Shown: one piece after another, positions 4,528-30,416 of the stretch
Layout: every line of letters starts with the position of its first letter
Position numbering within the stretch: the first letter of the stretch is position 1
From: Lepidodermella squamata
Taxonomy: Eukaryota > Animalia > Gastrotricha
Direction: 5' to 3'
Assembly (NCBI GenBank): GCA_047495785.1
Contig: JBLDXI010000033.1
Coordinates: forward strand, 1,364,001-1,428,000
DNA: 64,000 nucleotides
The notes under the pieces: model-generated
Seen by the model: the letters and a program-made list of their open reading frames with translations, nothing else
Told to the model about the DNA's origin: nothing
The model's database searches: none
Position numbers and translations under genes: made by a program

Positions 4528-5643
4528 ATGCCAACTGTTACGAAGAAACTCGTCCTATCCAGTACGTCGAAAGATCTAACCGCTGGTCTGTCCCTGGAAG
4601 AGGAAACGCTGCCGGAACCGAAGGCTGGCGAGGCGCTAGTCAAAGTCTTGTACTCCCCGATTAATCCAGCAGACACCATGGTGTTGTCGGGAGAATACCC
4701 GCGCAAGTTTCAACTGCCAGCAACGCCTGGTTTTGAGGGTGTAGTCGAAGTGGTCCAGTCACCCAGCGGCGCCTTTCAACCAGGTGATAGGGTCATCGTT
4801 CAAACACCGCTTTGGGGCAATTGGCGCCAGGCTGGAATCGCGCTAGAAAAAGACCTCCTAAGGTTGCCGAAGGAACTGCCGGCCGAAGCTGCTGCCACTC
4901 TTATCGCTAATCCATCTACTGCCTACGTGTAAGAAAAACTGAAACAATTTTTGGGAACAAAATTGAAATTTTTGAAATTTTCAGAATGCTCAAGTACAGT
5001 TTCCCGCTAAACGCCGGAGACGTGATCATTCAAAATGGCGCTAATTCGGCTCTTGGAAAAATCGTCATCCAATTAGCCAGGGTCTTCGGTTACAAAACCA
5101 TCAACGTCGTTCGTGCTCGGCCGAATTTGCAAGAGCTGGTCGATGAGCTGAAGAAACTCGGCGCTGATGCTGTCATCACCGACGAACAGCTGAAGGGCGG
5201 TATCGCCAAGCTGAATCTCGGCCTCCCAGCGCCCAAGGTAGCTTTTGAATGTGTTGGTGGGGAAGCTAGCCTGCACCTAGCTTCAGCTTTGGCTAATGGC
5301 GGAACTCTGGTCAATTATGGCTTCTTGAGCGGCCAGCCTGTTTATCTGTCGCAGGGTGACTTAATTTTTCGCGACATTCGCATGGTCGGCTTCAGCCTAC
5401 ATCCGTAAGTTTGGTTTTAATTTTTCAGACTTTCCGACACAATTAATGAACATTATTTTTAGGTTGATCGCCAACAAGCGCAATGAGTTCAATGAAGTTG
5501 TCAAGGTAATTATTGGTCTTTTCGTGAGCGGGAAATTGCAGGTTCCCAAATTTCGCAAATTTCCTGTCGCCGAATGGAAAGAAGCTATCAAGTATTCTGT
5601 TGCTGGATTCACGAACGAGAAGGTTCTCATTCAGTTCAATTGA
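4528..5643 (+). CDS. MECR-like: MECR/ETR-like enoyl reductase, copy 2
   Basis: Same motifs and same two intron positions as copy 1; ends KVLIQFN*. Confidence 0.88.
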
Positions 5644-5889
5644 ATCTTGACGAATGCAAGGAACGTGACAAATATCGCTTATTTTTGTGAACAGTAAATA
5701 ATGCTGTGAGTGATTTTTCGAACCCTTCAACTTGCTTTCAATTGCAACTGATTTGATTTTTCTGAATTTGTTGGGAAAGCTTCAAATAACGATCCAATTT
5801 GACTTGGAAGCCTTTGAGAACACGAGTAATTTTCTTGTACAGGATACACCAGGATAAAAAGAGTACAACACTAACGGCGGAACGTTTAC

Positions 5890-6278
5890 GTTCCCCAGTT
5901 CTAATAAGTATCACAGATCACAGCAGCTTACAACTATTGGTGAACCTTGAATTTTGTCTGAATAAAAGATTCATGAATTTTCCAGTATAGGGCCGTTTTT
6001 CGAATGATCGTGCTGTTTTATTTGACCTTCAAATCGGTGGTTCAAAGCCCAGAATAACTGACCGGCAGGAGCTAGAGATTTTCATAAAAAGAAAAGATCC
6101 ACTGCATCATTGCCTAGTTTTCCTAGTCCTACTTATCATCGTATTTTACGGCGGTGCCGGGCCTTATTTACTGACCAACAAATTTCACAAAGGTTCTGTG
6201 GCAGTTCTGATAGCGGAGACGGCACTCGGACCTGTAATACGGAGCGTCCGGCCTGGGTTCTTTGAAGATATACGAAAA
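5890..6278 (+). pseudogene. Truncated, degraded copy of the 3' part of the 7TM receptor gene at 13465-14708
   Basis: Colinear similarity to ~14230-14620 including the second intron (cagcttacaactattgg..., ccgtttttcgaatgatc, ggtggttc.aagcc.agaataactga, ccgggccttatttactgacca.caaatttcacaaaggttctgt). No 5' exon and contains indels. Confidence 0.8.
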
Positions 6279-7434
6279 GCCTATAGGTGTACATAATTAT
6301 GTGGTACTACTTGAATTTAAACTATTTGTACATAATTTTCAAAATTGAACTTTGTTTCTACACGAACTTTTGGGCTTTTCCTGGTTAGGGTTACGGTTAC
6401 GGTTACGGCAATATCCGCGGCTCTATTATCGCACTTGAAACATAATTTGAAAGAAATAAAATACACTATAAGTAACACTTCCATACGCTTGCGTGTCTCA
6501 ACAATCCGTCGCAAATTATTTGACCAACTTTTTCCCCATCAATCACTGTGAAGCCGTGTATGATCTAGCAGCAGTTTTTTGTCTCATTTTTTGCCATTTT
6601 TTCATGTGCTTTTGCGTGTCCAACAGTCCGTCGCAAATTATTTGACCAAAGTTTTCCCCAACAATCCATGCGTAGCCGTTTATGCCCTAGCAGCAGCTTT
6701 CTGTCACATTTTTTGCCCTAGGGGGCTACGACCACTTATTTCACCACGCGTGAGCCAGGAAAAATATAAAATGTAACCCACTTCTTGTCGGTCAACAGCT
6801 ATATAAGTCGCCGGCAATCCACTGTCAAGCCAGCATCCTATTTTTCAGATCAAGCTTTATCATTAGTTTACGTTAAATTTTGCAATAGTAGCCCGGTCTT
6901 ATATAATTTAAATTCTCCGAAAATGGGCTAGTATTAGTGGTAAATGGTGCTTCAATCGAGTAAACAGGTTTTTAATCAAGTTTTATTGCGAATAGGCCTC
7001 TGTACAAGATGGGTTTTTAAAAATTTAAAAATTTTACTTTAATCCAAATTTAAAATTATAATTTACCTATTCGCCCAAAACTGGGTTTTCCGAGTTTTCT
7101 GGAATTTTGCGATTAATTAAAAAAAATTACGCTTAAATTATTTCGTGATTTTATTTACAAGGCATGGTCCTCACTTTCAGAACGCGACGCAGTTATTTTC
7201 TAAGAAATTATTCGAAAATATAGCACCTCTCATAAGTTTGCGTTTGTTGCAAGGTTTTGATATTTGGTTCCGCTATGTAGTCAATTCTGGTTCCGTAGAA
7301 AATGATCTTTAAAAAACCCAGAATTTACAGGCCAATTCTCCTTGACTCGACTCTAGTTACGTGGCAATTTGAAATACTTCACTTAGAATCTGATTTAAAG
7401 TACCTAACGAATAAATTAAAATTTCACAGCCACC

Positions 7435-8544
7435 ATGCCAGCTGTTACGAAGAAACTCGTCCTATCTGCTCCGTCGAAAGATCTGACCGCTGGTCTAAAT
7501 CTCGAGGAGGAAACCATCCCCGAGCCTAAAACCGGCGAAGCTTTGGTCAAAGTTCTGTACTCTCCGATCAATCCGAGCGATATCGGCGTCCTAGATGGAA
7601 GATATAACGCTCTCGTTTCACTGCCAGCAACGCCCGGTTTCGAGGGTGTAGTCGAAGTGGTCAAGTCACCCAGCGGCGCCTTTCAACCAGGTGATCGGGC
7701 CATCGTTCAAACACCGGCGTGGGGCTACTGGCGCCAGGCTGGAATCGCGCTAGAAAAGGACCTCATGAAATTGCCGAAGGAACTGCCAGCCGAAGCTGCA
7801 GCCACTCTGATCATCAATCCATGCACTGCTTACATGTGAGAAAAGCCTAATGGGATTTTCCGATTGAAGTTAACATTTGAAATTTTTCAGAATGGTCAAG
7901 CACAGTATCCCACTGAATGCCGGAGATGTGATCATTCAAAATGGCGCGAATTCGGCTCTTGGAAAAATTGTTATCCAATTAGCTAAAGCCCTTGGTTACA
8001 AAACCATCAACGTCGTTCGTGCTCGGCCGAATTTGCAAGAGCTGGTCGATGAGCTGAAGAAACTCGGCGCCGATACTGTCATTACCGACGAGCAGTTGAA
8101 GGGAGGTCTTGCCCAGTTGGATCTCGGCCTGCCAGCTCCTAAATTGGCTCTCGAATGCGTTGGCGGGGAAGCTAGTCTCCACCTAGCTGCAGCTTTGGCA
8201 AACGCCGGAACTCTGGTCAACTACGGCGGCATTAGCGGCCAGCCTGTTTATCTGTCTCAAACTGACATAGTTCTCCGTGAGATACGCTTAGCCAGCTGCA
8301 ATATTTTTATGTTTGATTTTATTTTGTCTCGTTTTCTAACGCAATTATATTGAATTTTTTTAGGTGGATCGCCCACAAGCCTAATGAGTTCTCTGAAGTT
8401 CTCAAGGATGTTATTGGTCTTTTCGTGAGCGGAAAATGTCAGGTTCCAAAGTTTCGCAAATTTCCTCTCGCCGAATGGAAAGAAGCTGTCAAGCATTCTC
8501 TTACTGGCTTTACGAACGAGAAGGTTCTCATTCAGTTCAATTGA
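7435..8544 (+). CDS. MECR-like: MECR/ETR-like enoyl reductase, copy 3
   Basis: Same structure. Second intron begins GTTTGA (GTAA missing relative to copy 4) but the frame is preserved (NIFM/WIAHK). Confidence 0.85.
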
Positions 8545-9022
8545 ATCCTAATGACGGCAAGGATTGTGACAATAATTGCCATTTCGTTTGAACATTATAT
8601 CATGCTGTTTTTGAAACCTTCAACTTCATCTGATATTTCAAAAATAATTTAGAAAGCTGCAAATAAACTACTATATTATTCTGCTTGATAGTTGCTTGAT
8701 TGCTCGCCAAGATGAGTATGACGCGGAAAGTCTCACGAATGCTATATAACAAGTTTTCTAATTAAAAAATAGTTGCTAAACTTCTGGGACACGTTGTAAT
8801 AATAGTACTAAATTTTTTTACGGCAATTCACAGAAATATTTGACCTCTCGACATCAGCCAATCGGGTTGTAGCGCTAAGTAATAAGAGCCAGACTAAGAT
8901 CGACTAAAAATTTCATTAACAATAATTTCAGAATTTTTTATCAAGGAAACTCCGCTATGATTAATGAGGTTTTAGCAAGTGTTTTTTCTCTTTTCAGCCT
9001 GAGCTGCGGAAAATCATTCTAG

Positions 9023-9520
9023 ATGGGGAAACAAGAGTGTATTGACGATTTTATGCTCGTGTTCTATGAAATAATCGCGAGACAGCAGACCGACGGAATC
9101 CTGATTATTCAAATGCCAACAAGTATTGGCCATGCGACCGGCTTCGATCCTGAGCAAAATCGTCGTTCGTCATCTGCCTTCAGGAAAGAGCGGTCACTGG
9201 TGTGTTACCTCGACTCTCCGTTCAGGTGTTCTCGAAGAATTTGACAGCTTGCCGACCCCATCTAAGCTTCCCGCGGCGATGCAAAAGCAGATTTGTTGAT
9301 GCATATCGAGTGTTAGCTGATGGCGATTCGATCGAAATTCAGTTTCAGCCCTGTTTTCAACAAACACAACAAGGATAGCGGCTATTACGCTTTGGCAAAT
9401 GTCGCGGAACTGATTTGCAACGGTGATCCGACCGAAGTCGACTACGACAGCTCTAAGATCATGGAACACCTTCTTTCCTGCTTCGCGAAAAATCACTCGA
9501 TTTTCTACTTTACCTGCGTC
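9023..9520 (+). pseudogene. Degenerate Ulp1/C48-like cysteine protease fragment, probably transposon-borne
   Basis: Pieces across frames read V.YLDS ... QKQIC* ... IEIQFQPCFQQ ... DSGYYALANVAELICNGDPTEVDYDSSKIMEHLLSC. This resembles the invertebrate C48-like pattern QQ...DCG.FAIA....L..G.DP....YD...MR.HL..C, with stops and frameshifts. Confidence 0.45.
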
Positions 9521-11876
9521 GAAGTAATGAGGACCAGCTCCAAAACCGAAGCGCAGAAAGATTTTCGAGTCAAAAACCGAAAAATCCACTGCTTTTAACA
9601 AGATTGCGTTATATTTTACTTCCTTGATAATAACGTGACAGTAATTCCTCCACCTTAGTAAGGATATCTGGGTTATTTTACCGGCAGCAAAATTTTTCTG
9701 ACTAGTTCGAATTTTAGAATTTTACTCCAGAATTTGGACTAATTCGGAAAATCGTGAAAATTGACGATGAGGTGGCCATAGTTACCCAAAAAAACTGTTT
9801 ATGAACACTATTCAAATGAGTTAATTGCTTCCGCGATCAAGTTCTAAGTGCTAATGTCTTCCAATGTATGAAATCACCCTCGTTTGAATAACGTCCTGTT
9901 TTCGGTTAAAAAAATAAACAGTATTACCTGTGATAAAATACCTGTGACAATAAAAATTTTGTTTATTGAAATTATCGTCGTTTTACCGTTGAATTTCGTT
10001 GAAAAAACGGCCGAAATCAGCGGCGAAGAGCAGTAATGGGAGCATTTGATTTAATTTCGAAAAGCTGAAATAATGCGGATGAAATTGCGGCCACCAATTT
10101 CAAGTCAGTAATTCATAGGCTTGAAAACTTGGGCATGAACTTGACATTTCATGATCATGGAATAAGTTTCGTAACTTATTTTTAAAACAAGGGTATTTTC
10201 ACGTTACAACATAATTAATCCAAATCACTCGGGGTTTGTGATATTAGATTTTGAAATTGGGTTCAGTCATGATCGAATGCTTCAATGTTCTTAAATTTCC
10301 TTCAGCGCAACGAAATCACGGTGGCCAAAAAGATACGCTAGGGGCGAAATTCATTGACTGGAGTGCGCATCAATTTAATCAGGAACTTTAAGCAATGGAA
10401 AAGAATTTCAACCGTTTTGGTCAATCGTCATTCGTCGTCGAAATCTTCATGCTCTCCGGCTGGTCAAAGCATCAGTGGCCACGACTCATGGAACAGAGCG
10501 CCGATATCAAGCCCCAATATCATCAGTTGCCTCCATGAAGCCACTCAAATCGGTTCTAGCTGGGTTCGCGCAGAAATCAAGGCTTCTACATCCCGGCATT
10601 TGGAGGACTGGCAACAATAGAAGCCATCCGCTCGCTGCAAAATGGTATCCAGGTCGCTGCGGAAATTAATCATGGATTGTGGTCAATTTTGCCGGTCGAA
10701 GACTCGCCGAGAAACCAGTTATTGTCGCCTCTAACGTTGCTATGCCTATTCGCTGAATTTCGGTTGCTGTTCAAAACCGCGAATTCGGAGGGAAAACCGG
10801 ATCGGCACCTGCGCGCGCGTGTGAGCCAGAGCACGGCGGGACAATGCGCGCGTGTGTCCATTGTTGTCGATTAGGAACCCGCCGTACCTCGGTCGACACC
10901 TACGAGCCGAAGCCCGACAAATGTGTTTGATGAGAGAGATTGCAGGCCCGTCGCATCCCGGTCGCCCTGAGCCACGTGGAAATCGACTGTGGCCCCGTCG
11001 GGGTCTGGTCGACCAGACCGCGATGTGGTCGCTTTCGGGCTTGGGTCGTAACATAGCCAGAGATATTTACAAAGTACTTATAAATCATGCTTTCTACCAT
11101 TAATCGATATTAAGTAACACTTCCATACGCTTGTGTGTCTCAACAGTCCGTCGCAAATTATTTGACCAAATATTTCCCCATCAATCCATGTTCAATTAAA
11201 TTTCAACAGGCATGCTCTGCGATTATGACCTACTTATAAATCATGCACTCGCCCATTAATCGATAGTAAATTGGGAGTAACACTGCCAGATGCTAGCTTG
11301 TCCAACCGTCCGTCGCAACTTATTTGACCAAATTTTTCCCCACCAATCCATGTGTAGCCGTTTATGCTCTAGCAGCAGTTTTTTGTCTCATTTTTTGCCA
11401 TTTTTTCATGTACTTTTGCGTGTCCAACAGTCCGTCGCAGATTATTTGACCAAATTTTTCCCCACCAATCCATGCGTAGCCGGTTATGCTCTAGCAGCAG
11501 CTTTCTGTCAACGACCACTTATTTCACCACGCGTGAGCCAAGAAAAATATAAAATTTAACCCACTTCTTGTCGGTCAACAGCTATATAAGTCACCGGCAA
11601 TCCACTGTCTAAGCCAGCATCCTATTTTTCAGATCAAGCTTTATCATTAGTTTACGTTAAATTTTGAAATAGCAGCCCGGTCTTATATAATTTCAATTCT
11701 CCGAAAATGGGCTACTATTCAAAATAGGCCTCTGTACAAGATTGATTTATAAATGGCTCTTGCTTTAATCGAAATTTTAAATTAAAAAAAGTAAAATTTA
11801 ACCCGCCTAACCCACTATTTCACTTAGGATCCCATTGGTATTATCGATTATCGAATAATAAAACTTCACAGCCATC

Positions 11877-12995
11877 ATGCCAGCTGTTTCGAAGAAACTC
11901 GTCCTATCTGCTCAGTCGAAAGATCTGACCGCTGGTCTAAATCTCGAGGAGGAAACCATTCCAGAGCCTAAAACCGGCGAAGCTTTGGTCAAAGTTCTGT
12001 ACTCTCCGATCAATCCGAGCGATATCGGCGTCCTAAATGGAAGACTTGGAGATGGTGCTCTCTTCTCACTGCCAGCAACGCCCGGTTTAGAGGGAGTAGT
12101 CGAAGTGGTCAAGTCACCCAGCGGCGCCTTTCAACCAGGTGATCGGGCCATCATTCAAATATCCCCGGGATGGGGCTACTGGCGCGAGGCTGGCATCGCG
12201 CTGGAAAAAGACCTCATTAAAGTGCCGAAGGAACTGCCAGCCGAAGCTGCTGCTACTCTGATCGTCAATCCATGCACTGCTTACATGTGAGAAAAGCCTA
12301 TAGTGGTATTTTCCGATATAATTTTGAATTTTATAGCATGGTCAAGCACAGTGTCCCACTGAACGCCGGAGATGTGATTATTCAAAACGGCGCGAATTCG
12401 GCTCTTGGAAAAATCGTCATCCAATTAGCCAAAGCCTTTGGTTACAAAACCATCAACGTCGTCCGAGAACGGCCGAACTTGCAAGAGTTGGCCGATGAGC
12501 TGACGAAACTCGGCGCTGATGCTGTCATCACTGACGAGCAGTTGAAGGGCGGCATTTCAAAGCTGAATCTCGGCCTCCCAGCGCCTAAATTAGCTATCGA
12601 ATGTGTTGGTGGCGAAGCTAGCCTGCACCTAGTTGCAGCTTTGGCAGACGGCGGAACTGTGGCCATCTACGCCGCCATGGCCGGCCAGCCTCTTTCTCTG
12701 TCTCAAGCTGACATAGTTCTCCGTGAGATGCGCTTAGCCGGCCTCAACGTTTTCTCGTAAGTTTGGTTTTATTTTGTCTCGTTTTCTAACACAATTATAA
12801 TGAACTTTATTTAGGTGGATCGCCCGCAAGCCTAAGGAGTACCCTGAAGTTGTCAAGGATGTTATTGGTCTTTTCGTGAGCGGAAAATTACAGCTGCCGA
12901 AATTTCGCAAATTTCCTCTCGCCCAGTGGAAAGAAGCTGTCAAGCATGCTGTAACTGGCGTTGTGAACGAGAAGGTTCTCATTCAGTTCAATTGA
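11877..12995 (+). CDS. MECR-like: MECR/ETR-like enoyl reductase, copy 4 (lacks the conserved Tyr after INPSD...G)
   Basis: Same three-exon structure; last exon WIARKPKEYPEVV...KVLIQFN* ends at 12995. Confidence 0.85.
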
Positions 12996-16136: not shown

Positions 16137-16206
16137 GTTAGGTTTAGGTTTAAGGCTAGGGTTAGGGTTAGGGTTAGGGTTAGGGTTAGGGTTAGGGTTA
16201 GGGTTA
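16137..16206 (+). repeat. Interstitial telomeric-type (TTAGGG)n tract
   Basis: About 7 perfect TTAGGG units plus degenerate flanking units. Confidence 0.9.
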
Positions 16207-16300: not shown

Positions 16301-18265
16301 ATGGGTCTCAATTTGTTACTAATATTTTTGGTACCGGCCTGTTTCGCCAACGAGGTAAGCAACCTTTACTCGAGGAAGTTTACCACTGGTTGCGATGCCA
16401 GCAATGAAGGGTGAGAATGGTTGCTGATTTTTTTTATTTTTTTTTAATTAATTTTTTTCAGCAATGTTTTCTATCTCACTTTTATGAGCAACATCCCGGA
16501 TCAGCCGAAGAATGTTCCCGTTGAAATTTTCGTGGCAACAGCCGCCGACAGCGCGTCCGTGACTCTTGAAACCGCAGCCGGCCGTGTCGATACGAAAACC
16601 GTTACCCGGGGCCAAATCGTCCGGTTCCAGGTCCCGCGTGAGGTTGCTGTTCTAACAGACACCGGCAAGTCGTCGCGAGCTCGCGTTGTCAAGGTCACCT
16701 CCGACCAAAAAATTGTAGTATACGGCGCCAATAAGGAGCACTACACCACCGATGCTTTCCTGGCCCTGCCTGAGACCGTCATTGGAACTCAGTACTACGC
16801 CGTCACGTGGTTCCCCCCGGTTAACTACGCCAAGCCCGATTACTGTGAAATCGCCATTGCCGCGGGCAAAGAGCAGGCTGTTGTTGAGATCACCCTGCCT
16901 CAAATCACCGGTGGCCAGTCAGGCGGTCGGGGATACCGCCCGGCTGATGCTGTCGCGACCTCGCCACTGCCCTTCATCCCACCAGAGCAGCCAGCTGTCC
17001 CGGCTCAGTTGCCGCCGCACGAACCCGAAACCCCGCTCGACTACCCACCACCTGGCGCGGATACCGTCCCATACCCGCACCGACCAGTTCCGGATAACGG
17101 CGGATATCCATTCAGCAACCAGCGCCTCGAGGATCCTCTGAACATCTACGCCGCTTATATGCCACCACCATACCCGGGCAATAACGAGGACACCGATGGC
17201 TACTACGTCCCAACGCCCATCCCTCACCCTGTTGATGCCGACCCTAGCGAAAGCATTGCTTGCAACGTCGAAATCGACGGCCGCGTGTACCGCAACGGCG
17301 ACACTATCACCGTGCAACTCCAGGCATTGGAAGCTCTTCAAATTCAGGCTAAATGCGATTTGACAGGTGCCTACATCAAGTCAACGCGTCCGATCGCCGT
17401 TTTCAGCGGAAACGCTCGTACCGCTATTGGCCCGGGCGCCATCACCCGTGATCATTTAGTCGAGCAGATCCCGCCAGTACCAACCTGGGGACGCACCTTC
17501 GTCACCCACCCAACCCCACGCCGCACTGTTGGTGATTACTTCAAGATCATCGCGGCTGAGGATGGTACTGAGATCACCGTCTCGCCGAGTGGTCGCCTCG
17601 TTAAGGCGGCTATCACCGACCGCCAGCAGCGCACGTTGAACGCTGGTCAACAATGGCAATTGGACGTTCCATCCCAGAGCTACCTCCACATTGTCGCGAC
17701 TAAGCCCATTTTGGTCGTGCAATTCGTGAAATCTCAGACAATTGGCACCGAACCAGCTGACCCGGCCATGAGCCTGGTTATGCCCATCGAGCAGTTCGGC
17801 CTCGGTTACACCTTCAACACCGTCGAGGGTGTCGCGACTACGTACCAAAATTTCATGACTGTTGCCGTTCATCGCGGTAAAGAGCACACCCTGGTGTTGG
17901 ACGGTGTCCCGGTTCAACCGGCTGAGGGTTGGTCCGAGGTGGCTGGTAGCAATGTGACGGTTGGCTACCTTAGCATCCACCCGGGTACGCACACCATTTC
18001 GAGCCAGAACGGTGACACCCGCTTTGCCACTTACATCTACGGTGCCGGCGATCGCGAGAGCTACGCATATCCTACCGGAATGTGCCTCAAGCTTTTGGTA
18101 AAATTTAATTTAATTTTTTAAAATTAAAAAAATTTTAAGGAGGGTTTTTTAGAATTTTCAAATTTTTCAATTAATTTTAATTAATTTAATTTTAATTTTT
18201 AGGAATGCCCGTCGACTCCTGGCTGCTGCTGCCAACGCTGCGAACGTGGCCTCGGTCTGTTCTGA
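16301..18265 (+). CDS. Secreted IgGFc-binding-protein N-terminal-domain protein, head 1 plus short Cys-rich tail
   Basis: Signal peptide MGLNLLLIFLVPACFA; exons 16301-16410, 16462-18097, 18203-18265. Motifs TDAFLALP, DLTGA.I.S..PIAVFSG, DHLVEQIPP..TWG, ADPAM, ESYAYP.G; Pro-rich insert; tail ECPSTPGCCCQRCERGLGLF*. Confidence 0.85.
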
Positions 18266-19126
18266 AAGCCTTATCGATACCTTTCGGCAATTCAGAGATG
18301 AGAAAAGAAAATGAAAAAAAAATCAGTGCTGTGAGATGATCAAAATCACCGTTTCGATCCTGTGCATTTCTTTATAATTTATTATTTTTCTAACCATAGC
18401 CTTGTATTTTTTGTCGAATATCGTGACCCTAGTTTTATTTACTATCGCGAATTTCTCACATTTTGCCGCAAAGTAAAAAAGGATGCTGCCACGTGATGGG
18501 TTCATTCTGATTCAACACTTAGCCATTTATTGTTATTTGCGGATATAAACCGCAGAATGTTTCAATCAGAGCATGACTGAGGCTTTGAGGCACGATTTTT
18601 CCCAGATGTGCACTCGTCTCCTGTTCCGGCTGGTTGATATAGCGTAAACACTGAGGCGTAGGCTTACCTAAATATTTTTCGTCATTCACGCCAAAAATTA
18701 TCATTTTTGCGCCACATACCTGCGATATATGAGGCCGGCTAATATATAATATGAAACACGGCCGCAGAATAAAAAAAAGTAAGCGTGGGAAAAACTACTC
18801 ATATCCTATATCTGGAGATGTCATGGCGGTAAATCGAGCAACCACCTTAATTTACAATTTCGGCTAATTTACCTGATGCTGATGGCAAAGTCCACCCGCG
18901 TCCGCTGTTGATTTTGTGCACACGCACTAATTTACATGTGTCAACACATCAACGACATCTTGTCACATCCGGTATATTGCACGTCAAATCTTAATGCAAC
19001 ACCGGAGACACATGAACTTCCTTAGCAACAGCTTGATTTGCGGTTCCGTTGCTAAGGACGCTAATTCTATTTTTTCAATTTTTTATTCCGAAATTCTCAA
19101 TTTTTCAGATTATTTTTGTATAATAA

Positions 19127-20634
19127 ATGTTGTTGGGCTTGTTAATCGCTTTTACCTGCTTTGGGAGGGCCGTTTTCAGCCAGCAAAGTCAGCCGAAAGC
19201 ACCCGAGCGTGACGATTGTAAGCAGTTGTCAAATTACGGCAATTCGTTTCATTTCACGGTTCTCGACACGGATGACGCTGTTAACCAGGCCATGGAACCG
19301 GCCCGACTCACCCTGGTACCAGCCCGGCAGACAGGTTCGACTCATCTGTCAATCAGAGCCGGGGCGTTTGCGCAAGATGGCGACTTTTCAAACTCGCCCG
19401 AACAGCAGGAAATACCGATGATGGCTCAAACCCGGCAACAGAGTGCAGTTGCGACCGGGCGATTCGAATTCGCAGTATGTAGCAAGTTCCAACAGGGTGC
19501 GACAGCCAATGCAACCGGAAAGGCTTGTATTGTCACGGAAAAGGCCGTCCGGGTCCAGACTAACCAGCCGGTAGCCGCTGCGGTGAGCCAGGGCGATGAG
19601 TCATACACTTTGATTCCTGATTCAGCGGCTGGGCAGGAATATATTGTGGCCGGTTGGTTCCCACCAACGAATCCATCGAATGCAATCAAGTCTGATTTTT
19701 TAATTTTCATTAATTTTTCAAAAATTTACTTATTTTCAGGCAAAATGTGTTGGCTATTGTGGCTATCATGGAAAATACAACAGTCACAATTTCTCTACCC
19801 TCCGACCCAACTTGGACGTGTCAAATCACATTCGGCACGGGTACTTATAGAGCCGGCGACAAATTTGACCTTGACCTAGAACGCGACAATAGCCTCATCG
19901 TGCAGGCTCAATGCGATTTGACCGGAGTTTTGGTCACCGCGACTCGGCCTTTCGCGGTTTTTTCGTCAATCAACCGCAACCAGGTTGGCTCGTCAACAGC
20001 CCGGTCTGTCATGCAGCTACCGCCTACGGCTGCCTGGGGCAAGCAACATGTAGCCTTCAAAACGCCTAGTTTGCCGAATTCGAACGAGCAGTTGGTTGAT
20101 ACTTGGAAAATTGTCGCTGGTTTAAACGATACTCAGGTCGTTCTATTTCATTCCGACACTCAGTCAAGCGAGACGCTGAACATAAAAGCGCGAAGTTGCT
20201 ACTCAATGTCGTTGAAAGAAGAAAAATGGGTTGAAATAACGTCCAATTACCCGGTTTTAGTTGTTCAAATCATCATGTCACGTGACGGAGCCACGCCGCA
20301 AGACGCCATTGTCCATACACCTGTCGAGCAATTTAAAACGCGAATGATGATGCCTCGTTATCTGTTATGGCCTCATAATTTGACGCTGGCAATCGTCCGG
20401 AAACAATCGCAAAGTTCGGCCCTGGCGATGAATGATGTCCCGTTAGCGATAGGCGAGTGGTCCCCTCAGCCTAATTTGGGCACCCAGGTGGCTGCTGTGC
20501 CCCTATCAACAGGGCTGGTATCGTCGTTTTTGAAGCTAAATTCACCGAGTGCCGCCTTTTCAGCCTACGTTGTAGAACGTTTCGATGGAAATAATGTTCG
20601 GATTTTTTCGGGCGGAACTTGCTACGACCAACTC
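19127..20634 (+). CDS. Divergent IgGFc-binding-domain head 2 (ends on a phase-0 donor; 3' partner exon not adjacent)
   Basis: Signal peptide MLLGLLIAFTCFGRAVFS; WFPP, QAQCDLTG.LV.ATRPFAVFS, QLPP..AWG, PVLVVQ. Intron at ~19690-19739; ends GTCYDQL|GTAAGT at 20635. Confidence 0.75.
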
Positions 20635-21420
20635 GTAAGTATTTATTAATAATTTATTTTCTAAATTTATCTGTTAATTTTGACTGGGTAACTTGTGCGC
20701 TCTATTTATTTTCTCGGCTTTTGAGACGTTTGAAGTTCCGACCGGAAACAGTCTCAAGAATGTGCGAGACATAGGGCTCGATGACCCAGTTTTTGTTATT
20801 GCGCGGGTCGATATTCGCCGAGTGGTATCTATAGATGAAAAGCGGTAAATAATGTGACTTGAGTCATCGGAACGATACAAAACCGATCGTTTTGTAGCGC
20901 GTGTTGGATGAGAAACCGAAACAAGAGGCGTGTTTGCTTAGCGCACTCGGCCGGCCACCTGCGCGCCTTGGCGCCGACGACGTCGTTCCAACGACGCGGC
21001 GAACATATTTACCCGGCATAGCTAGACGCTAATAACAACAATGACAATAAGACCAACGGCAAACACGGCGAAAATAGCGCGTTAAATTAATCAATGCTTT
21101 ATACTATACGACGACGGTGATGACTGTTATTTACTCGGTAATTAATAACCGCAACAGATAAGTGTAGTAGTACGACCACACCCTCTCGAGCCAACTACCT
21201 ACCTGGTTGGCGACAGCGCGCGGGAAACAACTTTCATTTCACCATTTCCCATATCGCAATAAAACTTGTTTATTAGCTTTTTGTTCCGCGCCGCAAAATC
21301 ATTGTTTTTTCTCCACAAAAATCAAGAGCCGTAAATAAACGTTGTTAGCAAACAACAACAACACCAAAACCCGGCCTCCAATCTGTTTCATCTCATTTAT
21401 TATCCATTAATGTAGCGAAA

Positions 21421-22986
21421 ATGAGACACCTATACGTATCCACCTTAATTATTTTAAAAATCGCGCTAATTAACCCAAGTCGCGCAACTACAACGGGTTG
21501 CGAAATCAGCAATGAGGGGTATGGTTATAATTATGATTTTTGATAACCGATAAATTAATCAAAAATTAGCAACGAGTACTACTTGACATTCATGACAAAT
21601 TTCGCGCAACAACCGCATAATGTCCCGATCGAAATTTTTGTCACCACCTTCGCTGATATGGCCACCGTTACGGTAGAATCGCTAGCTGGGATCGAACGAA
21701 AAACAGTCTCCCACAACGCAATCATAACGTTTCAGCTACCAAGGCAATACGTGGTGCTTCATAATACCGGGAAAACGTCTCGAGGCCGGGCGGTTCGCAT
21801 TACTTCTGACCAGAAAATCGTCGTTTATGGCGCGAATAAGGAGACATATACTACGGACGCGTTTCTCGCCTTACCTGGAAACGCGATTGGTCAGCAGTAT
21901 TACGCAATTTCTTGGTTCCCGCCGACCTATTTCTGCGAACTAGCCATCGCGGCGACGAGTAATAAAACTCAGGTCGAGATCACCCTGCCTAAAGAATCGC
22001 AACAAGCTGCTCCGAAATCGACTCTCGTCCCGAAACGAGCTGTGAACCAGAGGCAAATGCGTATTTTGAAAAATTTGACTGGCATCGATCCGGATCAACT
22101 AATCGATGACCCTGAGAGCCAGTTCTACGTACCACAGCCGGACAATATACCAGCTCCCTATATACCATGTGAGGTCGAGCATGACGGTCGGGTGTATCGC
22201 AGTGGAGACACCCTGTTGGTGACGATGAATGAAATGGACGCTTTGCAAGTTCAGGCGAAATGCGACCTGACCGGCACGTTGATTAAGGCGGATAAGCCGA
22301 TTTCAGTCTTCAGCGGTAACGACCGAACAGCGATTGGCCCGGGTGCAATCACGCGTGACCATCTAGTCGAGCAGCTGCCACCAATCAGCGCTTGGGGTCG
22401 TAATTTCGTAACAACGCCCATCCCACGTCGGACAATTGGCGACTATTGGAAATTGATTGCGGCTGAAAACGACACGACTGTCACGGTATCTGGGCTGAAT
22501 GTCGATGAGGATAGCCGTGTTTTGGCAGCTGGCCAAAATTGGCTACTCGATTTAGGATCCTCGTCCCACGCGTTCATCTCAGCCTCTAAGCCAATCATGG
22601 TCGCTCAATTCGTGAAGAGCCAACAGGAGGGCAGTGAAGACGCCGACCCAGCTATGTTGATCGCAAACCCCCTGGAACAGTTCGGTCTCGGCTACACGTT
22701 TTCGACTGTTGAAGGCGTTGCGAATCCTTACAAAATCAATTTCATGATGATTGCGGTGGAAAAGGGCAAGGAGTCTGATTTGCTGCTCGACGGCGCTAGG
22801 TTCGAGCCGGCCGAGTCGTGGACTGAAGTTCCATTGTCTAATGTAACGGCTGGTTACATCGTCCTGGAGCCGGGTACTCACACGATCGGGAGCCAAAATG
22901 GAAACGCGCATTTTGCGACCTACATTTACGGGGCGGGAGATCGCGAGAGCTATGCGTACCCTACAGGAACTTGCCAACATGTCCTC
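21421..22986 (+). CDS. IgGFc-binding-domain head 3
   Basis: Signal-peptide exon 21421-21518, intron to 21569, long exon ending ESYAYPTGTCQHVL|GTAAGT (donor 22987, phase 0). Clearly paralogous to head 1. Confidence 0.85.
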
Positions 22987-23264
22987 GTAAGTATTATTAA
23001 ACGCACAAGTTACCCAGTTGGTTATTTAATTACTTAATTAATTACACGTAAAAAGCGTTGGACGTCCTTTAAAATCGAAAGTTCTCGAGTTTTTTTTGCA
23101 CGATTTTTTTTCGAGTTGAGTTTTGTGCTACTCAAGTTGAGGCTGACGAAAGATCTTTCATTTTGGAGGGCGTCCTCGCTTGTAATGTGGAAATGCCCTC
23201 TAAAGTGCGGATTTTTCCGAAGCTAAAACTGTGCTTTTTTCATCAACCTCCTTAAAAATTGAAG

Positions 23265-25611
23265 AATTGCCTGCCGAGTTTTATGGAACCGCTCGACGGC
23301 AGAGACAACGACTGTGATGGCAGCATCGATGAGGAAATTTGCGATGATAAGGACGATGATGGCGATGGCCTGATCGATGAAGACTGCGGTGCTGCAACGC
23401 CTATCCAAGGGCCGTCAAAAATAGGTAAATGACAAAATTTCGAATTTTTTAATCTTAAATTCGAAATTTCAAGAAATGCGAAGAACTGTTGGCTGCTACA
23501 ACAAAAGAGCTGAGCTCTCCTGCCCAGCCGGGAAAACCATTAAGATAATTTCAGCCCATTATGGTCGGATAGGCTTTGTTGGCGATAATACTTGCCAAAT
23601 CGGTAACACATTCGATTTCAACGGCTTCGAGGTCGACTGCGGATTCAAAGACATTCACTCGAATGTCGCAAGCCAGTGTGACAAACAGCCCAATTGCGCC
23701 GTTACGGTCAACGAGCACGGCCTCGGAAGTGTTTGCAACTCTGGGCCATGCAAGCCATGCAGCCTTTACGCCGATATTCAATACACATGTCTTGGTATGA
23801 AATAATTCTTTATTATAGTCGAAATTATTTGAAATTTTCACGCTCAGATGAACCGCGTTGGAGCTGCTGGCACCCTACTAGTCGAATCTCCTCCACAACC
23901 CCCGAGCATTGGTCTGCGAGCTCAACTGAGAAGAGACCTAGGAGTGAGCAGGGCTGTCTCAGTGGTCGGAACAAGGCCTTCAATAACTCACCATTTGAGC
24001 CGAGAAAATCCGGATGCGAAACGTGTCTTCCTACAACAAATCGGTTATCGACAGCCGCACCATCAGAAGCTTTCTCAGGCCGGCTCGGCGCGTCGAATCT
24101 TGAGTCATGGTGCCCGGCGTTTTGCGACAAAACTCTCCCGTTCCTTCAGGTCGATCTCGGTGGTGATTTTCTCGTAGTCGGATTTTTGATCCAGGGCCAG
24201 CGTTATCTTGACAACTTCGCGACAAGTGTCGCAATTTCCTACAGCCACGACGGCCGTAGCTGGTACGAACTCCGCGAACCAGCCCAGGCGTTGGTCTTCA
24301 AATTCGACGCGAATAACGACCCTAGGACGATTACCGGCTTTCATTTGAATAGCTTGAGCTTCATTGCGAGATATGTCCGCTTTGTTGCGTTGGACAGCGT
24401 TGGGTCACCCTGCATGCACGTCGAGGTCATCCGGTGCAACGAGCGTGTCGAATGTGGGCCGTTGCAAATCGCCAATTCAGACGCGTTGAACAAAGCTGGG
24501 CAGATAGATCAAATCCTTCGCGTTAGCTGTTTGTCAAATTTCGAAACGCCCGATGGCTTGAAGGCGTTTGAGGTCATCTGCGAGCGGGCCGAGGGCGGCG
24601 CCGGGTTGCCGGTCTGGGGTGGTAAACGCGAGTGTTCGGTCGCTAAATCTTGCGCATTCATCCCGGCCGTTCAAGATGCGCTTCATGACGCGGTGAATGT
24701 CAAACTTGGAACGAAGGTCAATTACACGTGTAATCCTGGGTTCACCCGATTTGGGCCGGAAACTGTAACGTGTGGCCCGGATGGACATTGGTCTCAAATC
24801 CCGTTCTGTGAGTTACTAATTTAATTCAAAAACTTCTTGAAATTCAATTTTTTTTTTATATTTTTATTTTAAATTTAAATTTAAATTTAAAATGTTCAAG
24901 ATTTCAAAAAATGGTTCAATTCATTTGTTAAAATTCCAGGCTGTAATCAATCTGAGCAGATACAAGGCCGCTGTTATAAGCTGTCGAAGATTCAACTTCC
25001 TTACGATGAAGCCGTTATCGAGTGTAAAATGCGGGGTGGCCAACTTGCTGAACCCACCGACCCAGCCGCGCTTTCTCAACTAGCCTCGCTCATTCGCCCG
25101 AGACGCGATATTGGCAACCGGCCTGTTTGGCTCGGTTTCACCGATCGATTCAGCGAGGGCCGATTCGTTTTCGAATCTTCCCAAATGGAAGCCACTCTGC
25201 CTTTCGCTGGAGGGTTCGCTAAACTTGAAATATTTCAAATAGAAACACCACCTTAAATATTACTATTTTTGCGATTTTTTAAGGTCACCTTCAAGCTCGG
25301 GCTATGAAAATTGTCTCACTCTTGAGTCGCGATCAAGCTTCACTCTGGCTGATTCAAGTTGCTCGAATTCGCTCTATTTTTTCTGTAGCTACAGCACTGA
25401 ACCAGCTGAAGAATTCTCGAACTTTGGCCGAGTTCCCGATCGCGATCCAACTGAATCATCAGGCTCAGGAGCCGAACAGCCTCAATCTACCTCATCTACC
25501 TCAGAAACGACCCAACCGGCCGAAACGACAACCGAAATTCAGCCGCCGACTTCGCGTTCAATTGCTGAATTTCTCGCTGATTTCGCGACAGCGATGGCTC
25601 GACGTCATTGA
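23265..25611 (+). CDS. Tail module A: DGxDNDCDGxIDE repeats, SUEL/rhamnose-type lectin, F5/8 type C (discoidin), CCP/sushi, C-type lectin, Ser/Thr-rich end
   Basis: Exons 23265-23424, 23474-23794, 23848-24807, 24940-25213, 25284-25611 join in frame at GT-AG sites. Motifs LSCP...I.I.SAHYGR, SWCP...LQVDL, ARYVR, CNPGF..G...C...G.WS, CY...A...C..GGQLA...VWLG.TD...EG.F. Confidence 0.8.
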
Positions 25612-26041
25612 AAATTGCCAGAGAAATACGAAAAATAATTACCTTGAACTAGTTTGCTGTCTATGCTTCTTTTTATCCTAAAAATACGATCTTCCTATAT
25701 AGGTATACATAGAGTCGAATAATTCTTCCTCTATTTCGACATCTCAGCATTCTTCCTATAGTTGAATACAGCTTCCGCAAAATTCCACCCCCTAATTTTT
25801 GATGACAATCATTTTACTCGTGAGTATCGTGCATTTTTTGTTGGTTTTCTATTCAGTATTTGCAATGTCTTGAAATAAAAATTTGAAAATATCGCAGCAA
25901 TAAAACGCAGAAAAATTTAATAATAATACGCGTTGTAAAGGACGTCCAACATATACCTATATAAATATAATTAAATTAACCAAATGAGTACTTTGTGAGT
26001 AAAAATTGAAATAATTGCATATATATATATTTTTAATTTAG

Positions 26042-28456
26042 AATTGCCAACCGGGCTTCATGATTCCAAACGACGGCAAAGACAACGACTGTGACGGTCG
26101 AATCGACGAGGAAATCTGCGGCGATGGATTGGGTAAGGCTATAAAAATTCGATAAAACCATTTTTCAAAATTGCTAATCTTAGACAATGATGGCGATGGG
26201 AAAATTGACGAAGACTGTGGAAGCACCTTCCAACCATCGACCGAGAAAAGATATGTCCTGCCCCGAATTCAAATCTGCTTCGGCGACCGGGCTGTTCTCG
26301 CATGCAACGCCTCGGCTGGGCAACGAATCCGTATTGTCCAGGCTCATTTCGGCCGAGCCGGTTATCCAGGTGAAGACTCATGCCGATCCGCCAACCCGAT
26401 TTCATGCTCAGGCGAAGAAGCTGACTGCGGCTGGCGAACGGTTCGCGATCACATCGGAACGATTTGCAACACTCGGGAAAAGTGCGAGCTTAAAGTCGAC
26501 TCAGCTTTCGTCTCAGCCTGCCCCCTCGACGCGACGTGCCCGCTCTGCGCTCAATACCTCGAAGTCATCTACATGTGCTCTACCGAACCAGCCGATTGCC
26601 AATACCTGGCGACCGATGCTGAATTTTCGTTCTCAGACGGCTACTACGGCGTTGAGGGTGGTAACGCTGGGGAGCTTTCGAGCTGCGCCTCAGCTCGAGA
26701 GTTCGATCAACTTGACAGTAACGCTATTCAATATTCAATGCTGCGCCGCGAACAGCCGACATGTGATGGCGGGTGTATCCAGAAGCAAGTTGGCGCGTCT
26801 CAAAAATTGGGCGAGAAAGTTTGCGCGGCTTCTTCGGCTTGCATGGACATGGATGGGTTGCCGAGTTGGTGCCCGGAACGGTGCCAACTAGCCCGACCTT
26901 ACCTCCAAATTGACTTGAAAGGTAAAATGACCTAACGTCAATTGAAGCCTTGAGAATTTAATCTCAAATTTAAATTTATTTTCCTAATTTTAATTTTTAA
27001 TAATTTTTAATCAATTTTTCAATTTATAATTATTGATAATTAATTTTTTAAGCTTCGAGCTTAAAAATCGAGGCCAAGATGAAATGCCTGGACGGCGTGA
27101 TCGTTCCAACCGTGATGTTCGGGTCCGAAGGATGGGCGATGACTCGTGAAGAAGAAAGAAGGCTAGATGTCTGCCAGATGAAATGGCTCAGGAACATTAC
27201 CGGAATTAGGCTGGCTGATAGGGTCCGAAATGAAACAATTAGAAAAAAATGTAATACGCAAAAATTATCAACAAAGGTCGCTAGGAATCAATTAAGATGG
27301 TACGGACACGTAGAACGCAGAGACTCGGAATCGCTATTGAAGCAGGTTAGGTATTGGGACCCCCCGGACGATTCGTGGCAAAGACCCCAGGGCCGTCCCA
27401 AACTGCGCTACTCAGACTGCATGAGAAGGCAGTTGAAGAAAATTAATATTGAGAATTGGGAGGACGCCGCTGTATTAGCTCAGAATAGAATTGAGTGGCG
27501 TACGAAATTGAAAAATATCACAGATTGATTTTTGAATAATGAATTCATTTCGCTCATTTTTCAAACAAAAATATCGAATTTTTCATCATTTTCAATACAC
27601 TTTGATTTTGGCTTGACTTAGGATCGACTAACGTTGGTCCTCCTCCGACACTCGGTATGGTTGGAGGAACACCATCATCCTTCAGCCATACCGGGTACAC
27701 CGGAGTGAATTTTATTTCGTTATGTGTACAGGTTTCCTTTTTTGTCTTTTTGCTCTAAACGAAATAAAGAAGATGTAATGTAATGTAATTTTTTAATTAT
27801 TCAATTTTAATTTATTTTCAGGAAAGTTCCGGATTAAAGCCGTAATTATGCAAGGTCGCCGAAACTGGGACCACTGGGTGACCTCAGTGACCTTCGCCTA
27901 TAGCTCCGACGGGGTTCAATGGACGGATAAGCTTGACCCCTACGGCGTAATCCAGGAGTACAAGGCCAACGAAAACCCATTCGACGCTGTTGTGTGGGCT
28001 TTCAACAACGGCGAATTCGAAGCTCGGTACCTTCGAGTGAATGTTCGAGAATGGTACGGCTACCCTGCGTTGAACCTTGAGGTAGTTCGATGCGCGGCAG
28101 CGCTCAGCTGTCCCGCGATTTCGGTCATGAATTCGAACATCCAAAGCGAGCCGGCTCTTTTCGGCCAGCAATTGGAGGTTCAATGCAACCGGCTATGGAT
28201 GACACCTAGTGGCGAGATTTCCTACAAACTAACGTGCCGGACGGATGGGGCGTGGGACTGCGGGGCTAGGCCATGTTCGGAATTGCGAACTTGCGGCGAT
28301 ATTCCAGCTGTGACCGGGGCGTTGCATAATGCGAGAAATATGCTTGTCGGATCGCTGGTAAGCTACGTTTGCCAGGGTGGTCGCCAAATTCAGGGCAACG
28401 CTACCGTCATCTGTCAGCCGAGTCGCGAATGGTCAGCTCCACCTAAATGTGTCTAA
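26042..28456 (+). CDS. Tail module B: DGxDNDCDGxIDE repeats, SUEL lectin, F5/8 type C, CCP/sushi; no start or signal exon of its own
   Basis: Begins ttttag|AAT TGC (phase 0, like module A); exons 26042-26132, 26184-26921, 27822-28456. No upstream coding exon seen between 25611 and 26041. Confidence 0.8.
27052..27785 (+). mobile_element. 5'-truncated non-LTR retrotransposon (RTE-like) in an intron of module B
   Basis: ORF 27079-27528 matches the post-RT C-terminus of RTE-type LINEs (P..MFGSE.W, LR.I.G....D.V.NE.IR, LRWYGHVER, RP.GRP..R..D, A..R..WR). (TGTAA)n tail; 11-bp direct repeat TAATTTTTTAA at 27041-27051 and 27786-27796. Confidence 0.9.
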
Positions 28457-29095
28457 AAATCGAATCTCAAAAACAATTATTACTCCAAGCATGGATAAAT
28501 AGTAAATTAATTGAAATTTGGTGAATTAATAAACAAAATTGTAAAGGAACGAGGTGATGAAACTCGAAATCCATTTTATAAACTAATTATACATGTGCTT
28601 TTATGAAATTTATCATCATAAAAACCTATTATTTTTCTGCTCACTGTTGTTATGATGGAAAATCATTCCATTAATTATCGTGCCTCTAGCAATTCTGATT
28701 GTACATAGCAAAAATTTATTGCGGGTAATAAAAATCGAATCGAGTAATTAGCGTTAATATTCAAGACAATTTCGGTCAATAACAAGATAATAACATTGAT
28801 AGTTTTTTGATGAGGTCAAAAGCGCACTAGAAGATGCAAGTGCGCTTGTAAACAATGCGGCCTTAAATGCCCGATAATCCGCAGCCATTTCCTTCACTCA
28901 TCCCCTCGAGCTAGGTGCCTAAACGTTTGTTGATATTATTTATGACACTTGGTTTTGCGCTTTATACGTGTGCTTTATACGTCTAAATTATACAAATATT
29001 TGCGAAAATTAACAGATTTTTATATTAGAGCAATATACAATAGCTGTTGTTTTTTACAAGTGATTACCTCTTCACGGTGTTATAACACAAAGGAA

Positions 29096-30341
29096 ATGTT
29101 TAGAAAAATGATTATCTTTCAACATCTGTTGTTGATATACCAACTTATCGAGTTGGCATCCGGCCAAAAATCTGACGATTTCCCGCCGGATCCACGATCT
29201 ATCGGCAATAGGTGCGTAGCTGATGAGGATTGCCTACCTGATTCAGATTGTGTTCTGATATCAACTACTTGCGATTACAAGTCCTGCGTTTGTCGCAAAG
29301 GATTCCGAATAGACCCTACCGATGGGCTATGCAAGCAAGGTGTTACAAAAAAATCCGCCTTAAAATTTCAATTTTTCGCAAATTTTTCATTAATTTGTGT
29401 AGTTAGGAATATAGATCAGCGCTGCAATAACCAGACAGATATTTGCGGCCCGATATTTTCGAGCTGTCAAGCTGGATTTTGCAAATGTAACGACAATTAT
29501 AAAACCGGACCGTCGGGCAACGAATGCGTCCTGACGATGAAGCGATCTTTCGAAGGCGAGCGGTGCTTCGATTCTATGGAATGCTACAACAATTTTGTTT
29601 GCCTTAAAAATCGCTGCAACTGCTACGATGGATTTCGAAGTTCGATCGATGGTCGAAATTGCATTGCAAGTTTGTTGGCCAATAAACCCTCAATAAATAT
29701 CTTTAAAACTCCTATCTATAGGGGAGCTTGGTGATGCGTGCGAAAAAGACTTGGATTGCTCGAGAATTCCTAACGCTATGTGCGGTGATGTTACCATGCA
29801 ATGTCAATGCAAGAGGGGTTATCACAAAATTATTTACAACCACTCGTTGACTGAATCTCGAGCAGCCTGCACTCCGATAAGAGGTAGACCCGCATTTCCT
29901 AATTTTCAGCTTCCTATCGCATTTTTTCCTATCATAGAGCCGGTAATTATTGAGGGAGGCCGGTGCTCGATGTTTGATGCCGAGCCTGTAGCTGGAAGGT
30001 ACTGTCGCCTGGGATATATTTGCGGCGGGTGTGAGCGCAATTTACTGAAAGTTGACACCTATTGCCTAAGGCCTCCAAATGCGGTGACAGTGGCTCTTAA
30101 TTCTCGCGCTAGTGTGATGATGAACGAAGAGATGCCGTTTACAAACGACGATTACGACCTAGAAATCGGAGATGTGAAGCCTAGAAAAACTGGGGCTAAC
30201 AGTTCCACAACGTCTACGACATCAAAACCGGCTGGGGTAGCAAAATTACTCGCAGGATCATGCTCAAATTGGAATTTAAAATTTTATTTGATTACTCTAA
30301 TACTCAGTAATGCAGGAATTTTATTGATGAGAATGTTTTGA
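29096..30341 (+). CDS. Cys-rich EB-module/EGF-like surface protein with signal peptide and hydrophobic (GPI-like) C-terminus
   Basis: Repeated G..C..D.DC...S.C.....C.C..GF units. Introns 29340-29402, 29670-29721, 29884-29937. Ser/Thr stalk followed by a hydrophobic tail. Confidence 0.72.
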
Positions 30342-30416
30342 ACTCATAGTTGCGCCTCTCTTATTTTTTAAATAAAATAAAATCAAAATTCATAGCGAAG
30401 TGTCAAGTTAATGCTG

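What the first reader, a model, noticed from the sequence alone, without database searches (positions are those of the whole stretch)
16301..28456. Combinatorial head x tail locus: three IgGFc-binding heads and three interchangeable phase-0 tails
Seen: heads 1, 2 and 3 each have their own ATG and signal peptide and end at the homologous position (G.C..L/V-L) on a phase-0 GTAA donor (18098, 20635, 22987). Three downstream exons start in phase 0 with x-Cys: EC at 18203 (20-aa tail), NC at 23265 (module A, ending in a C-type lectin) and NC at 26042 (module B, no C-type lectin). I found no terminal exon for head 2 before head 3 begins, and no 5' exon for module B. Inference: the units cannot be plain tandem genes. 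Either head 2 splices across head 3 plus A to B (nested), or 2->A and 3->B (interleaved), or heads and tails combine freely. This is like clustered protocadherin/UGT1A variable first exons, but with variable ends as well. The products would be a diversified set of secreted multi-lectin proteins (recognition, mucus or adhesive roles are guesses).
Basis: partly seen in the sequence, partly recalled or inferred. Interest (0 to 1): 0.9.

Follow-up and report, generated by a model that had tools for sequence, protein, structure and literature searches.

The report
Two-head, two-tail mix-and-match lectin gene
A small invertebrate (probably the gastrotrich Lepidodermella squamata) lines up two protein front ends and then two back ends in one locus, and long-range base pairing between the introns appears to let either front be spliced to either back, a design so far described for a mite neuronal receptor gene.

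Summary
The exons are real, but the system is 2x2, not 3x3. Heads 2 and 3 and modules A and B form one locus (H2-H3-A-B). Its order, phase-0 junctions and open frames are kept in a distant relative with saturated silent sites. One RNA contig joins head 2 to A across head 3 (9 letters beyond the donor). B is expressed while head 3 is almost uncovered, so B probably takes head 2 too. In both species the three non-coding intervals carry strong, competing duplexes of unrelated sequence. They loop out head 3, module A, or both; the relative has a direct 24-bp helix from the head-2 intron to the B acceptor. H2-B, H3-A and H3-B are inferred, not seen. Head 1 with its 20-aa tail is a separate gene: its intron shows no pairing, and its counterpart in the relative has no donor. 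Closest known: mite sDscam-beta1 (5' cassettes, headless extra 3' exon, docking/selector pairing). This is a convergent variant in secreted IgGFc-binding/lectin proteins, with no constant exon. Two first-reader notes on this same DNA flagged two of the duplexes; I found no note of this locus on other DNA. Protein function is untested.

The parts
19127..20634 (+). Head 2: signal peptide + fast-evolving IgGFc-binding domain; intron 19690-19739; phase-0 donor at 20635
   Evidence: RNA contigs over 20331-20634; orthologue 60-63% aa identical
20680..20699 (+). Selector S1, about 48 nt after the head-2 donor; 20-bp helix (17 Watson-Crick) with 23002-23021, looping out head 3
   Evidence: -32.3 kcal/mol, 0 of 400 shuffles
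21421..22986 (+). Head 3: own ATG and signal peptide + IgGFc-binding domain; intron 21519-21569; phase-0 donor at 22987
   Evidence: orthologue 64-66%; almost no RNA contigs in X1
23001..23032 (+). Docking site D1, 15 nt after the head-3 donor; pairs with S1 or, in competition, with 25968-26000
   Evidence: the second pairing is -23.5 kcal/mol and falls to -12.7 with the X2 allele
23057..23075 (+). Docking site D2; pairs with 25936-25950 (15 bp, loops out A) or locally with 23160-23175 (shortens the path to the A acceptor)
   Evidence: 0 of 400; 0 of 500 in two nulls
23159..23207 (+). Switch arm: 23159-23175 pairs with D2, or with 23193-23207 once D2 is taken by the B selector
   Evidence: prediction only
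23265..25611 (+). Module A (5 exons): DNDCDG repeats, SUEL lectin, F5/8C, Sushi, C-type lectin-like, Ser/Thr tail; AAG acceptor; AATAAA at 25874 and 25899
   Evidence: joined to head 2 in one RNA contig
25936..26000 (+). Selector S2, just after A's poly(A) signals, 41-106 nt before the B acceptor
26042..28456 (+). Module B (3 exons): DNDCDG repeats, SUEL lectin, F5/8C, Sushi; no head or signal peptide of its own
   Evidence: intron 26133-26183 spliced out in RNA contig; orthologue 55-61%
16301..18265 (+). Head 1 with 20-aa Cys-rich tail: a neighbouring head-only paralogue, probably outside the combinatorial unit

Best explanation
H2-H3-A-B is one gene with two alternative promoter-plus-head cassettes and two alternative terminal modules, with no constant exon between them. 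Steps: (1) transcription starts before head 2 or before head 3 (inferred from two ATG/signal-peptide starts). (2) In head-2 transcripts S1 pairs with D1, loops out head 3 and sits 15 nt from its donor, so the head-2 donor reaches the A acceptor (junction shown once; helix predicted). (3) If polymerase passes A's poly(A) signals before the A junction is made, S2 captures D2, loops out A and brings either donor to the B acceptor (inferred). The looped-out distances are about 175 nt for both H2-A and H2-B, and about 60 nt for H3-B. (4) The products are up to four secreted proteins of about 970-1185 aa that pair one of two IgGFc-binding heads with one of two glycan-binding tails (with or without a C-type lectin-like end). 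I take them most likely for cross-linking parts of mucus, cuticle coat or adhesive secretion; that role is inference from domain content only. Head 1 is a separate head-only gene.
For: H2-A junction: loose end of 9 letters behind 20634 equals the start of A, not of B, and occurs nowhere else in the locus. B exons covered and spliced while head 3 has no contig over 21421-22930. Same order, junction phase and open frames in a relative with 65-74% of four-fold sites changed; 1:1 orthology of H2, H3, A, B at 100/99 support. Window helices beat 400 shuffles each. In the relative all three interval pairs form duplexes of -44, -43 and -38 kcal/mol (0 of 60, 80, 100 shuffles), including a direct 24-bp helix from +54 after the head-2 donor to -85 before the B acceptor, the same places as S1 (+48) and S2 (-92) in the window, with no alignable intron sequence between species. 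Joined-interval folding gives the same four states in both species. Ordinary paralogues are single head+module frames, so head+module is the normal product.
Against: Only one of four junctions is seen, in one contig, by 9 letters; the loose end nearest the B acceptor was dropped by the tool as lying at a repeat. Contig depth is a poor measure and A coverage is patchy. No compensatory base changes could be shown, because the two species' introns do not align and the relative's strains are invariant in the arms. With a gapped-alignment score the S1:D1 pairing is not significant (31 of 500) and several pairs in the relative are marginal. The X2 allele removes 9 nt of the proximal S2 arm. Promoters were not mapped. 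Cis- and trans-splicing cannot be told apart here.
Confidence: 0.66

Rival explanations
1. Two fixed, interleaved genes: head 2 always joins A and head 3 always joins B; the competing duplexes enforce this crossing and prevent other joins.
For: The only junction seen is H2-A. In the window S1:D1 and D1/D2:S2 compete for D1, which maps neatly on these two products.
Against: B is covered from its first exons while head 3 is nearly blank in the same run. S1:D1 and D2:S2 can coexist. The strongest helix of the relative links the head-2 intron straight to the B acceptor.
Confidence: 0.12
2. Three of four products: head 2 is the main head and picks A or B like a 3'-variable gene (PGRP-LC type); head 3 is a minor, stage-restricted start that uses only one tail.
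For: Head 3 is almost absent from the one RNA run; the H3-B-specific arm is weakened in X2.
Against: Head 3 is the best conserved unit (66% aa); both species have duplexes that would serve H3-B, and H3-A needs none.
Confidence: 0.12
3. Full 3x3 system: head 1 also joins A and B, in cis or in trans.
For: Head 1 ends on the same phase-0 donor position, 2.5 kb upstream on the same strand; its junction was not covered by reads.
Against: No pairing of its intron above chance; a T-rich acceptor lies 105 nt away; the relative's counterpart has no donor and its own stop. Heads 2 and 3 cannot reach the upstream 20-aa tail in cis.
Confidence: 0.05
4. B is a downstream operon-like cistron: it receives a spliced leader at 26042 after 3'-end formation of A and makes a headless protein from the Met at codon 7.
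For: B's acceptor lies about 140 nt after AATAAA; a scan note reports spliced-leader RNA genes in this genome (s1-421969, not tested); B's upstream partner was not seen.
Against: The product would have 30+ cysteines and no signal peptide; that Met is also present in A and so is a family residue; it does not explain the helices aimed at the B acceptor in both species.
Confidence: 0.04
5. Artefact: mis-assembly or a template-switch chimera in the RNA library.
For: Run X1 holds many fold-back chimeras.
Against: The join falls exactly on a GT donor and an AG acceptor; independent DNA contigs and a second species give the same order.
Confidence: 0.01

Closest known systems
Tetranychus urticae sDscam-beta1 (Hou et al. 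2022, PMC9258826)
   Same: Tandem 5' cassettes with their own promoters, then two alternative 3' regions, the second with no 5' variable region of its own; selectors 43 +/- 10 nt after each donor pair with a docking site and cut the effective intron to about 120 nt. Here: +48/+54 nt and about 125-175 nt.
   Different: Membrane Ig receptor with many cassettes and extensive trans-splicing; one docking site before each constant region. Here 2x2, secreted lectin-type proteins, multi-exon tails with their own poly(A) signals, and in the window a relay through the central intron rather than a direct donor-acceptor helix.
[quoted passage not shown] 2018, PMC6191721)
   Same: Competing docking/selector pairing chooses among duplicated terminal cassettes, coupled to 3'-end formation; pairing also masks a nearby 5' splice site.
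   Different: Those have a common 5' region; here the 5' coding region is itself variable.
Clustered protocadherins and UGT1A (own knowledge)
   Same: Alternative promoters, each with a large first coding cassette.
   Different: They splice to constant exons; this locus has none.
Plain IgGFc-binding + SUEL + F5/8C + Sushi genes of the related species (L011, L012; P0021)
   Same: Same domain order as a joined head + module.
   Different: Tandem stand-alone genes; in L011 genes 1, 2 and 4 and L012 head and module run on with no intron at the junction.
FCGBP N-terminal domain proteins, e.g. frog glue protein PRIT-Dg (PMC11237159)
   Same: Secreted IgGFc-binding-domain protein that works with a lectin in a sticky secretion.
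   Different: There the lectin is a separate galectin; here lectin domains are fused. Only a functional lead.

Membership tests
Docking/selector-controlled variable-cassette genes (sDscam-beta1 / PGRP-LC type) | Duplicated cassettes with splice-compatible (same phase) junctions | tested here: met
Docking/selector-controlled variable-cassette genes (sDscam-beta1 / PGRP-LC type) | A distal junction that skips an intervening cassette is made in RNA | tested here: met
   one contig, 20634 to 23265, 9 letters
Docking/selector-controlled variable-cassette genes (sDscam-beta1 / PGRP-LC type) | One intronic site complementary to two or more competing partners near splice sites | tested here: met
   weaker by the gapped score
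Docking/selector-controlled variable-cassette genes (sDscam-beta1 / PGRP-LC type) | Pairing conserved with compensatory changes in alignable elements | tested here: inconclusive
   position and logic conserved, sequence not alignable; strains invariant
Docking/selector-controlled variable-cassette genes (sDscam-beta1 / PGRP-LC type) | Disruptive and compensatory mutations change and restore cassette choice | not testable with these tools
   needs minigenes
Fully combinatorial 5' x 3' locus | Each head is found with each tail | tested here: inconclusive
   one of four junctions seen
Fully combinatorial 5' x 3' locus | Each head has its own promoter | not testable with these tools
   contigs cannot show starts; each head has an ATG and a hydrophobic N-terminus
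Clustered protocadherin / UGT1A type | Variable first exons splice to a shared constant region | tested here: not met
   no exon lies between the head donors and the two alternative modules
Dscam / sDscam protein family | Ig and FNIII domains with a membrane helix | tested here: not met
   Pfam shows IgGFc_binding, SUEL, F5/8C, Sushi only
IgGFc-binding-domain proteins (PF17517) | Match above the Pfam cut-off | tested here: met
   205, 112 and 211 bits against 25.6

The most novel reading that the evidence does not exclude
A gene with no constant exon, in which a three-node RNA pairing network (a riboswitch-like relay in the central 278-nt intron) couples promoter choice to tail choice and yields all four head-tail proteins; the network has been rebuilt from unrelated sequence in two long-separated species while keeping its logic and the positions of its outer elements.
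Probability: 0.45. Interest if true: 0.8.

Novelty: new variant of a known kind. Interest (0 to 1): 0.66.

Why it matters
Docking/selector control of cassette choice is documented mainly in arthropods and chordates (list in PMC9258826). A case in a probable gastrotrich, in a secreted lectin family, would show the design arose again independently. The unit is compact (about 9 kb, three control intervals of 278-786 nt), so it is an easy model to test how RNA pairing links promoter choice, splicing and poly(A) choice, and how such a network can turn over completely in sequence while keeping its wiring. It also shows a layout (head, head, tail, tail) that gene predictors will split into a headless gene and a tailless one.

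Tried and rejected
Local terminal exon for head 2 and own start exon for B: candidates listed in both species, none conserved or with a usable frame. Pairing of the head-1 intron with the other intervals: at chance level. Direct S1-S2 helix in the window: not significant by the helix test (40 of 400). Covariation: strains of the relative too close, species too far. More species: three word-index searches and one full search found only one related species; the JGI scan gave only distant hits. Rfam: nothing. Head fold: confident all-beta model (pLDDT 92) without a clear solved relative; best Z 10 for residues 1-105 to 1nc7, weak carbohydrate-binding-module-like hits below that, so no function follows. 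'Weak A acceptor' is only a soft point: AAG also ends two internal A introns. Following the operators' notes, I searched exon by exon and left out any search with joined head+tail proteins; reads were laid on 6,000 letters (20331-26330), so the head-1 donor was not covered.
Full report
Observation. Corrected exon models translate cleanly; all three heads end in phase 0 at the same protein position, and the three downstream exons begin in phase 0. Pfam confirms IgGFc_binding in each head and DNDCDG repeat, SUEL lectin, F5/8C and Sushi in both modules, with a weak C-type lectin match at the end of A only. Heads 1 and 3 are 52% identical, head 2 is about 29% identical to either, and A and B are 29-33% identical outside their first exon.

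Organism. Not identified by sequence. The scan lists 1993 windows on 147 pieces for this genome and the window is about 43% G+C; the published Lepidodermella squamata assembly has 122 Mb, 157 contigs and 43% G+C (PMC11660948). Other scan notes reach the same guess. I treat it as probable only.

RNA evidence. One read-laying run covered 20331-26330. Run X1 is labelled RNA by guess, but it shows intron 26133-26183 removed at GT..AG, so it holds spliced RNA. One X1 contig leaves the genome exactly at the head-2 donor and continues with nine letters, AATTGCCTG. These are the first nine of module A; B begins AATTGCCAA, and the only other plus-strand copy in the window is 32 kb away inside another gene and does not follow an AG. 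So head 2 is spliced to A across the whole of head 3. In the same run the end of head 2, most of A and the first exons of B are covered, whereas head 3 has no contig over 21421-22930 and one shallow contig near its end. If B came only with head 3, the end of head 3 should be covered like the start of B. This points to head 2 as B's main partner, but depth of contigs is a poor measure and the tool dropped one loose end at a repeat, one of the two repeats being 26015-26045. H2-B, H3-A and H3-B were therefore not seen. Run X2 is DNA of a slightly different individual and confirms the genomic order.

Comparative evidence. A full search with head 3 found one close relative, on metagenome contigs. 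Three contigs carry H2-H3-A-B and a fourth H2-H3-A, in the same order, with the same donors and the same NC acceptors. Trees pair H2, H3, A and B one to one at 100/99 and suggest A and B are sisters (92/91). Proteins are 54-66% identical while 65-74% of four-fold sites differ, so all four units have been kept intact over a long time. The same samples hold ordinary paralogues in which head and module are one frame, in tandem; head plus module is thus the normal product, and a head alone or a module alone is not. The counterpart of head 1 lies on other contigs, has a much longer Pro-rich insert, and runs through the junction position into a 14-aa end with no donor. Ion-channel paralogues flank both contigs (80-85% identical, no overlap), so it may be nearby, but it cannot splice to A or B from that position.

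RNA pairing. Two scan notes on this DNA (s1-411483, s1-411488) named two complementarities; I tested them. Apart from A+T runs, the two longest exact inverted matches in 14 kb are 20683-20699 with 23002-23018 (17 nt) and 23057-23071 with 25936-25950 (15 nt). Both use the 278-nt interval after head 3, and each beats 400 dinucleotide shuffles. D1 can also pair with 25968-26000, in competition with S1; D2 can pair locally with 23160-23175, whose other partner is 23193-23207. In the relative the intervals share no alignable sequence with the window, yet all three interval pairs form strong duplexes: head-2 intron with pre-B spacer (24 unbroken pairs, -44), head-2 intron with head-3 intron (-43), head-3 intron with pre-B spacer (-38), none reached by 60-100 shuffles. 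The head-3-intron site and the pre-B site each have two competing partners. The outer elements sit at +48/+54 from the head-2 donor and -92/-85 from the B acceptor in the two species. Folding the joined intervals gives four states in both: head 3 looped out, A looped out, both, or neither. Cautions: a gapped-alignment score leaves S1:D1 and some pairs of the relative marginal; folding of joined intervals ignores the exons; the X2 allele deletes 9 nt of the proximal S2 arm and halves that duplex, while S1:D1 barely changes. The head-1 intron shows nothing above chance with any interval.

Mechanism. Shown: H2-A splicing across head 3; B transcribed and spliced; conserved layout. Predicted: the helices. 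Inferred: two promoters; S1:D1 hides head 3 (its internal acceptor is in another phase, so a join to it would shift the frame); A is used if its junction and poly(A) site (AATAAA at 25874, 25899) act before S2, just downstream, is made and captures D2; otherwise A is looped out and B is used. The effective introns for H2-A and H2-B come out equal at about 175 nt. Origin, by inference: one head-intron-module gene whose head and module were duplicated separately, with head 1 a copy that kept only a stub of module. The head folds as a confident all-beta model with no clear solved relative. A role in mucus, coat or glue follows only from domain content and from the frog glue protein PRIT-Dg (PMC11237159).

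Comparison with known systems. Hou et al. 2022 describe for mite sDscam-beta1 an extra 3' exon homologue with no variable region of its own, spliced to the 5' cassettes, with selectors 43 +/- 10 nt after each donor and an effective intron near 120 nt, proven by compensatory mutation (PMC9258826). Pan et al. 2018 show competing pairing in 3' variable regions (PMC6191721). The locus works like these but is not a Dscam, and it fails the protocadherin/UGT1A test because it has no constant exon. My paper searches found no description of this locus or of this layout in an IgGFc-binding family; the library is incomplete.

Verdict. Real, conserved, and partly shown in RNA; a 2x2 system rather than 3x3; a new variant of a known kind. 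Interest 0.66. Searches with joined proteins were left out.

Noticed in passing
window 16158-16206: About eight telomere-type TTAGGG repeats lie 100 nt upstream of the head-1 ATG, far from the window ends.
   Followed up: no
window 26922-27821: The 900-nt second intron of B holds a 157-codon stretch (27052-27525) that looks like the 3' end of an RTE-type LINE (from memory; no Pfam hit) and a 19-bp hairpin at 27650-27696. The relative has no intron here.
   Followed up: partly
window 643-12982: Four or more tandem copies of a gene resembling trans-2-enoyl-CoA reductase (MECR-like, by eye), with other repeated blocks between them.
   Followed up: no
L011:1-12772: Tandem array of at least four plain IgGFc-binding + SUEL + F5/8C (+ Sushi) genes in the related species; the scan's notes list no such array for this genome.
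   Followed up: partly
L017:4217-11136: A gene with three IgGFc-binding heads in chain, then a phase-0 intron at about the same junction position and a SUEL + F5/8C module.
   Followed up: partly
L003:2248-5406: The head-1 counterpart carries about 550 residues of Pro/Gln/Cys repeats (PCDHPSDPCG-like) inside the head, where head 1 has a shorter Pro-rich insert; cuticle- or glue-like.
   Followed up: no
window 20641 and 25981-25992: Run X2 differs by a 26-nt insertion between the head-2 donor and S1 and a 9-nt deletion in the proximal S2 arm: natural variants that could shift isoform ratios.
   Followed up: partly
window 29090-30400: A secreted Cys-rich gene with EB modules follows module B.
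   Followed up: no
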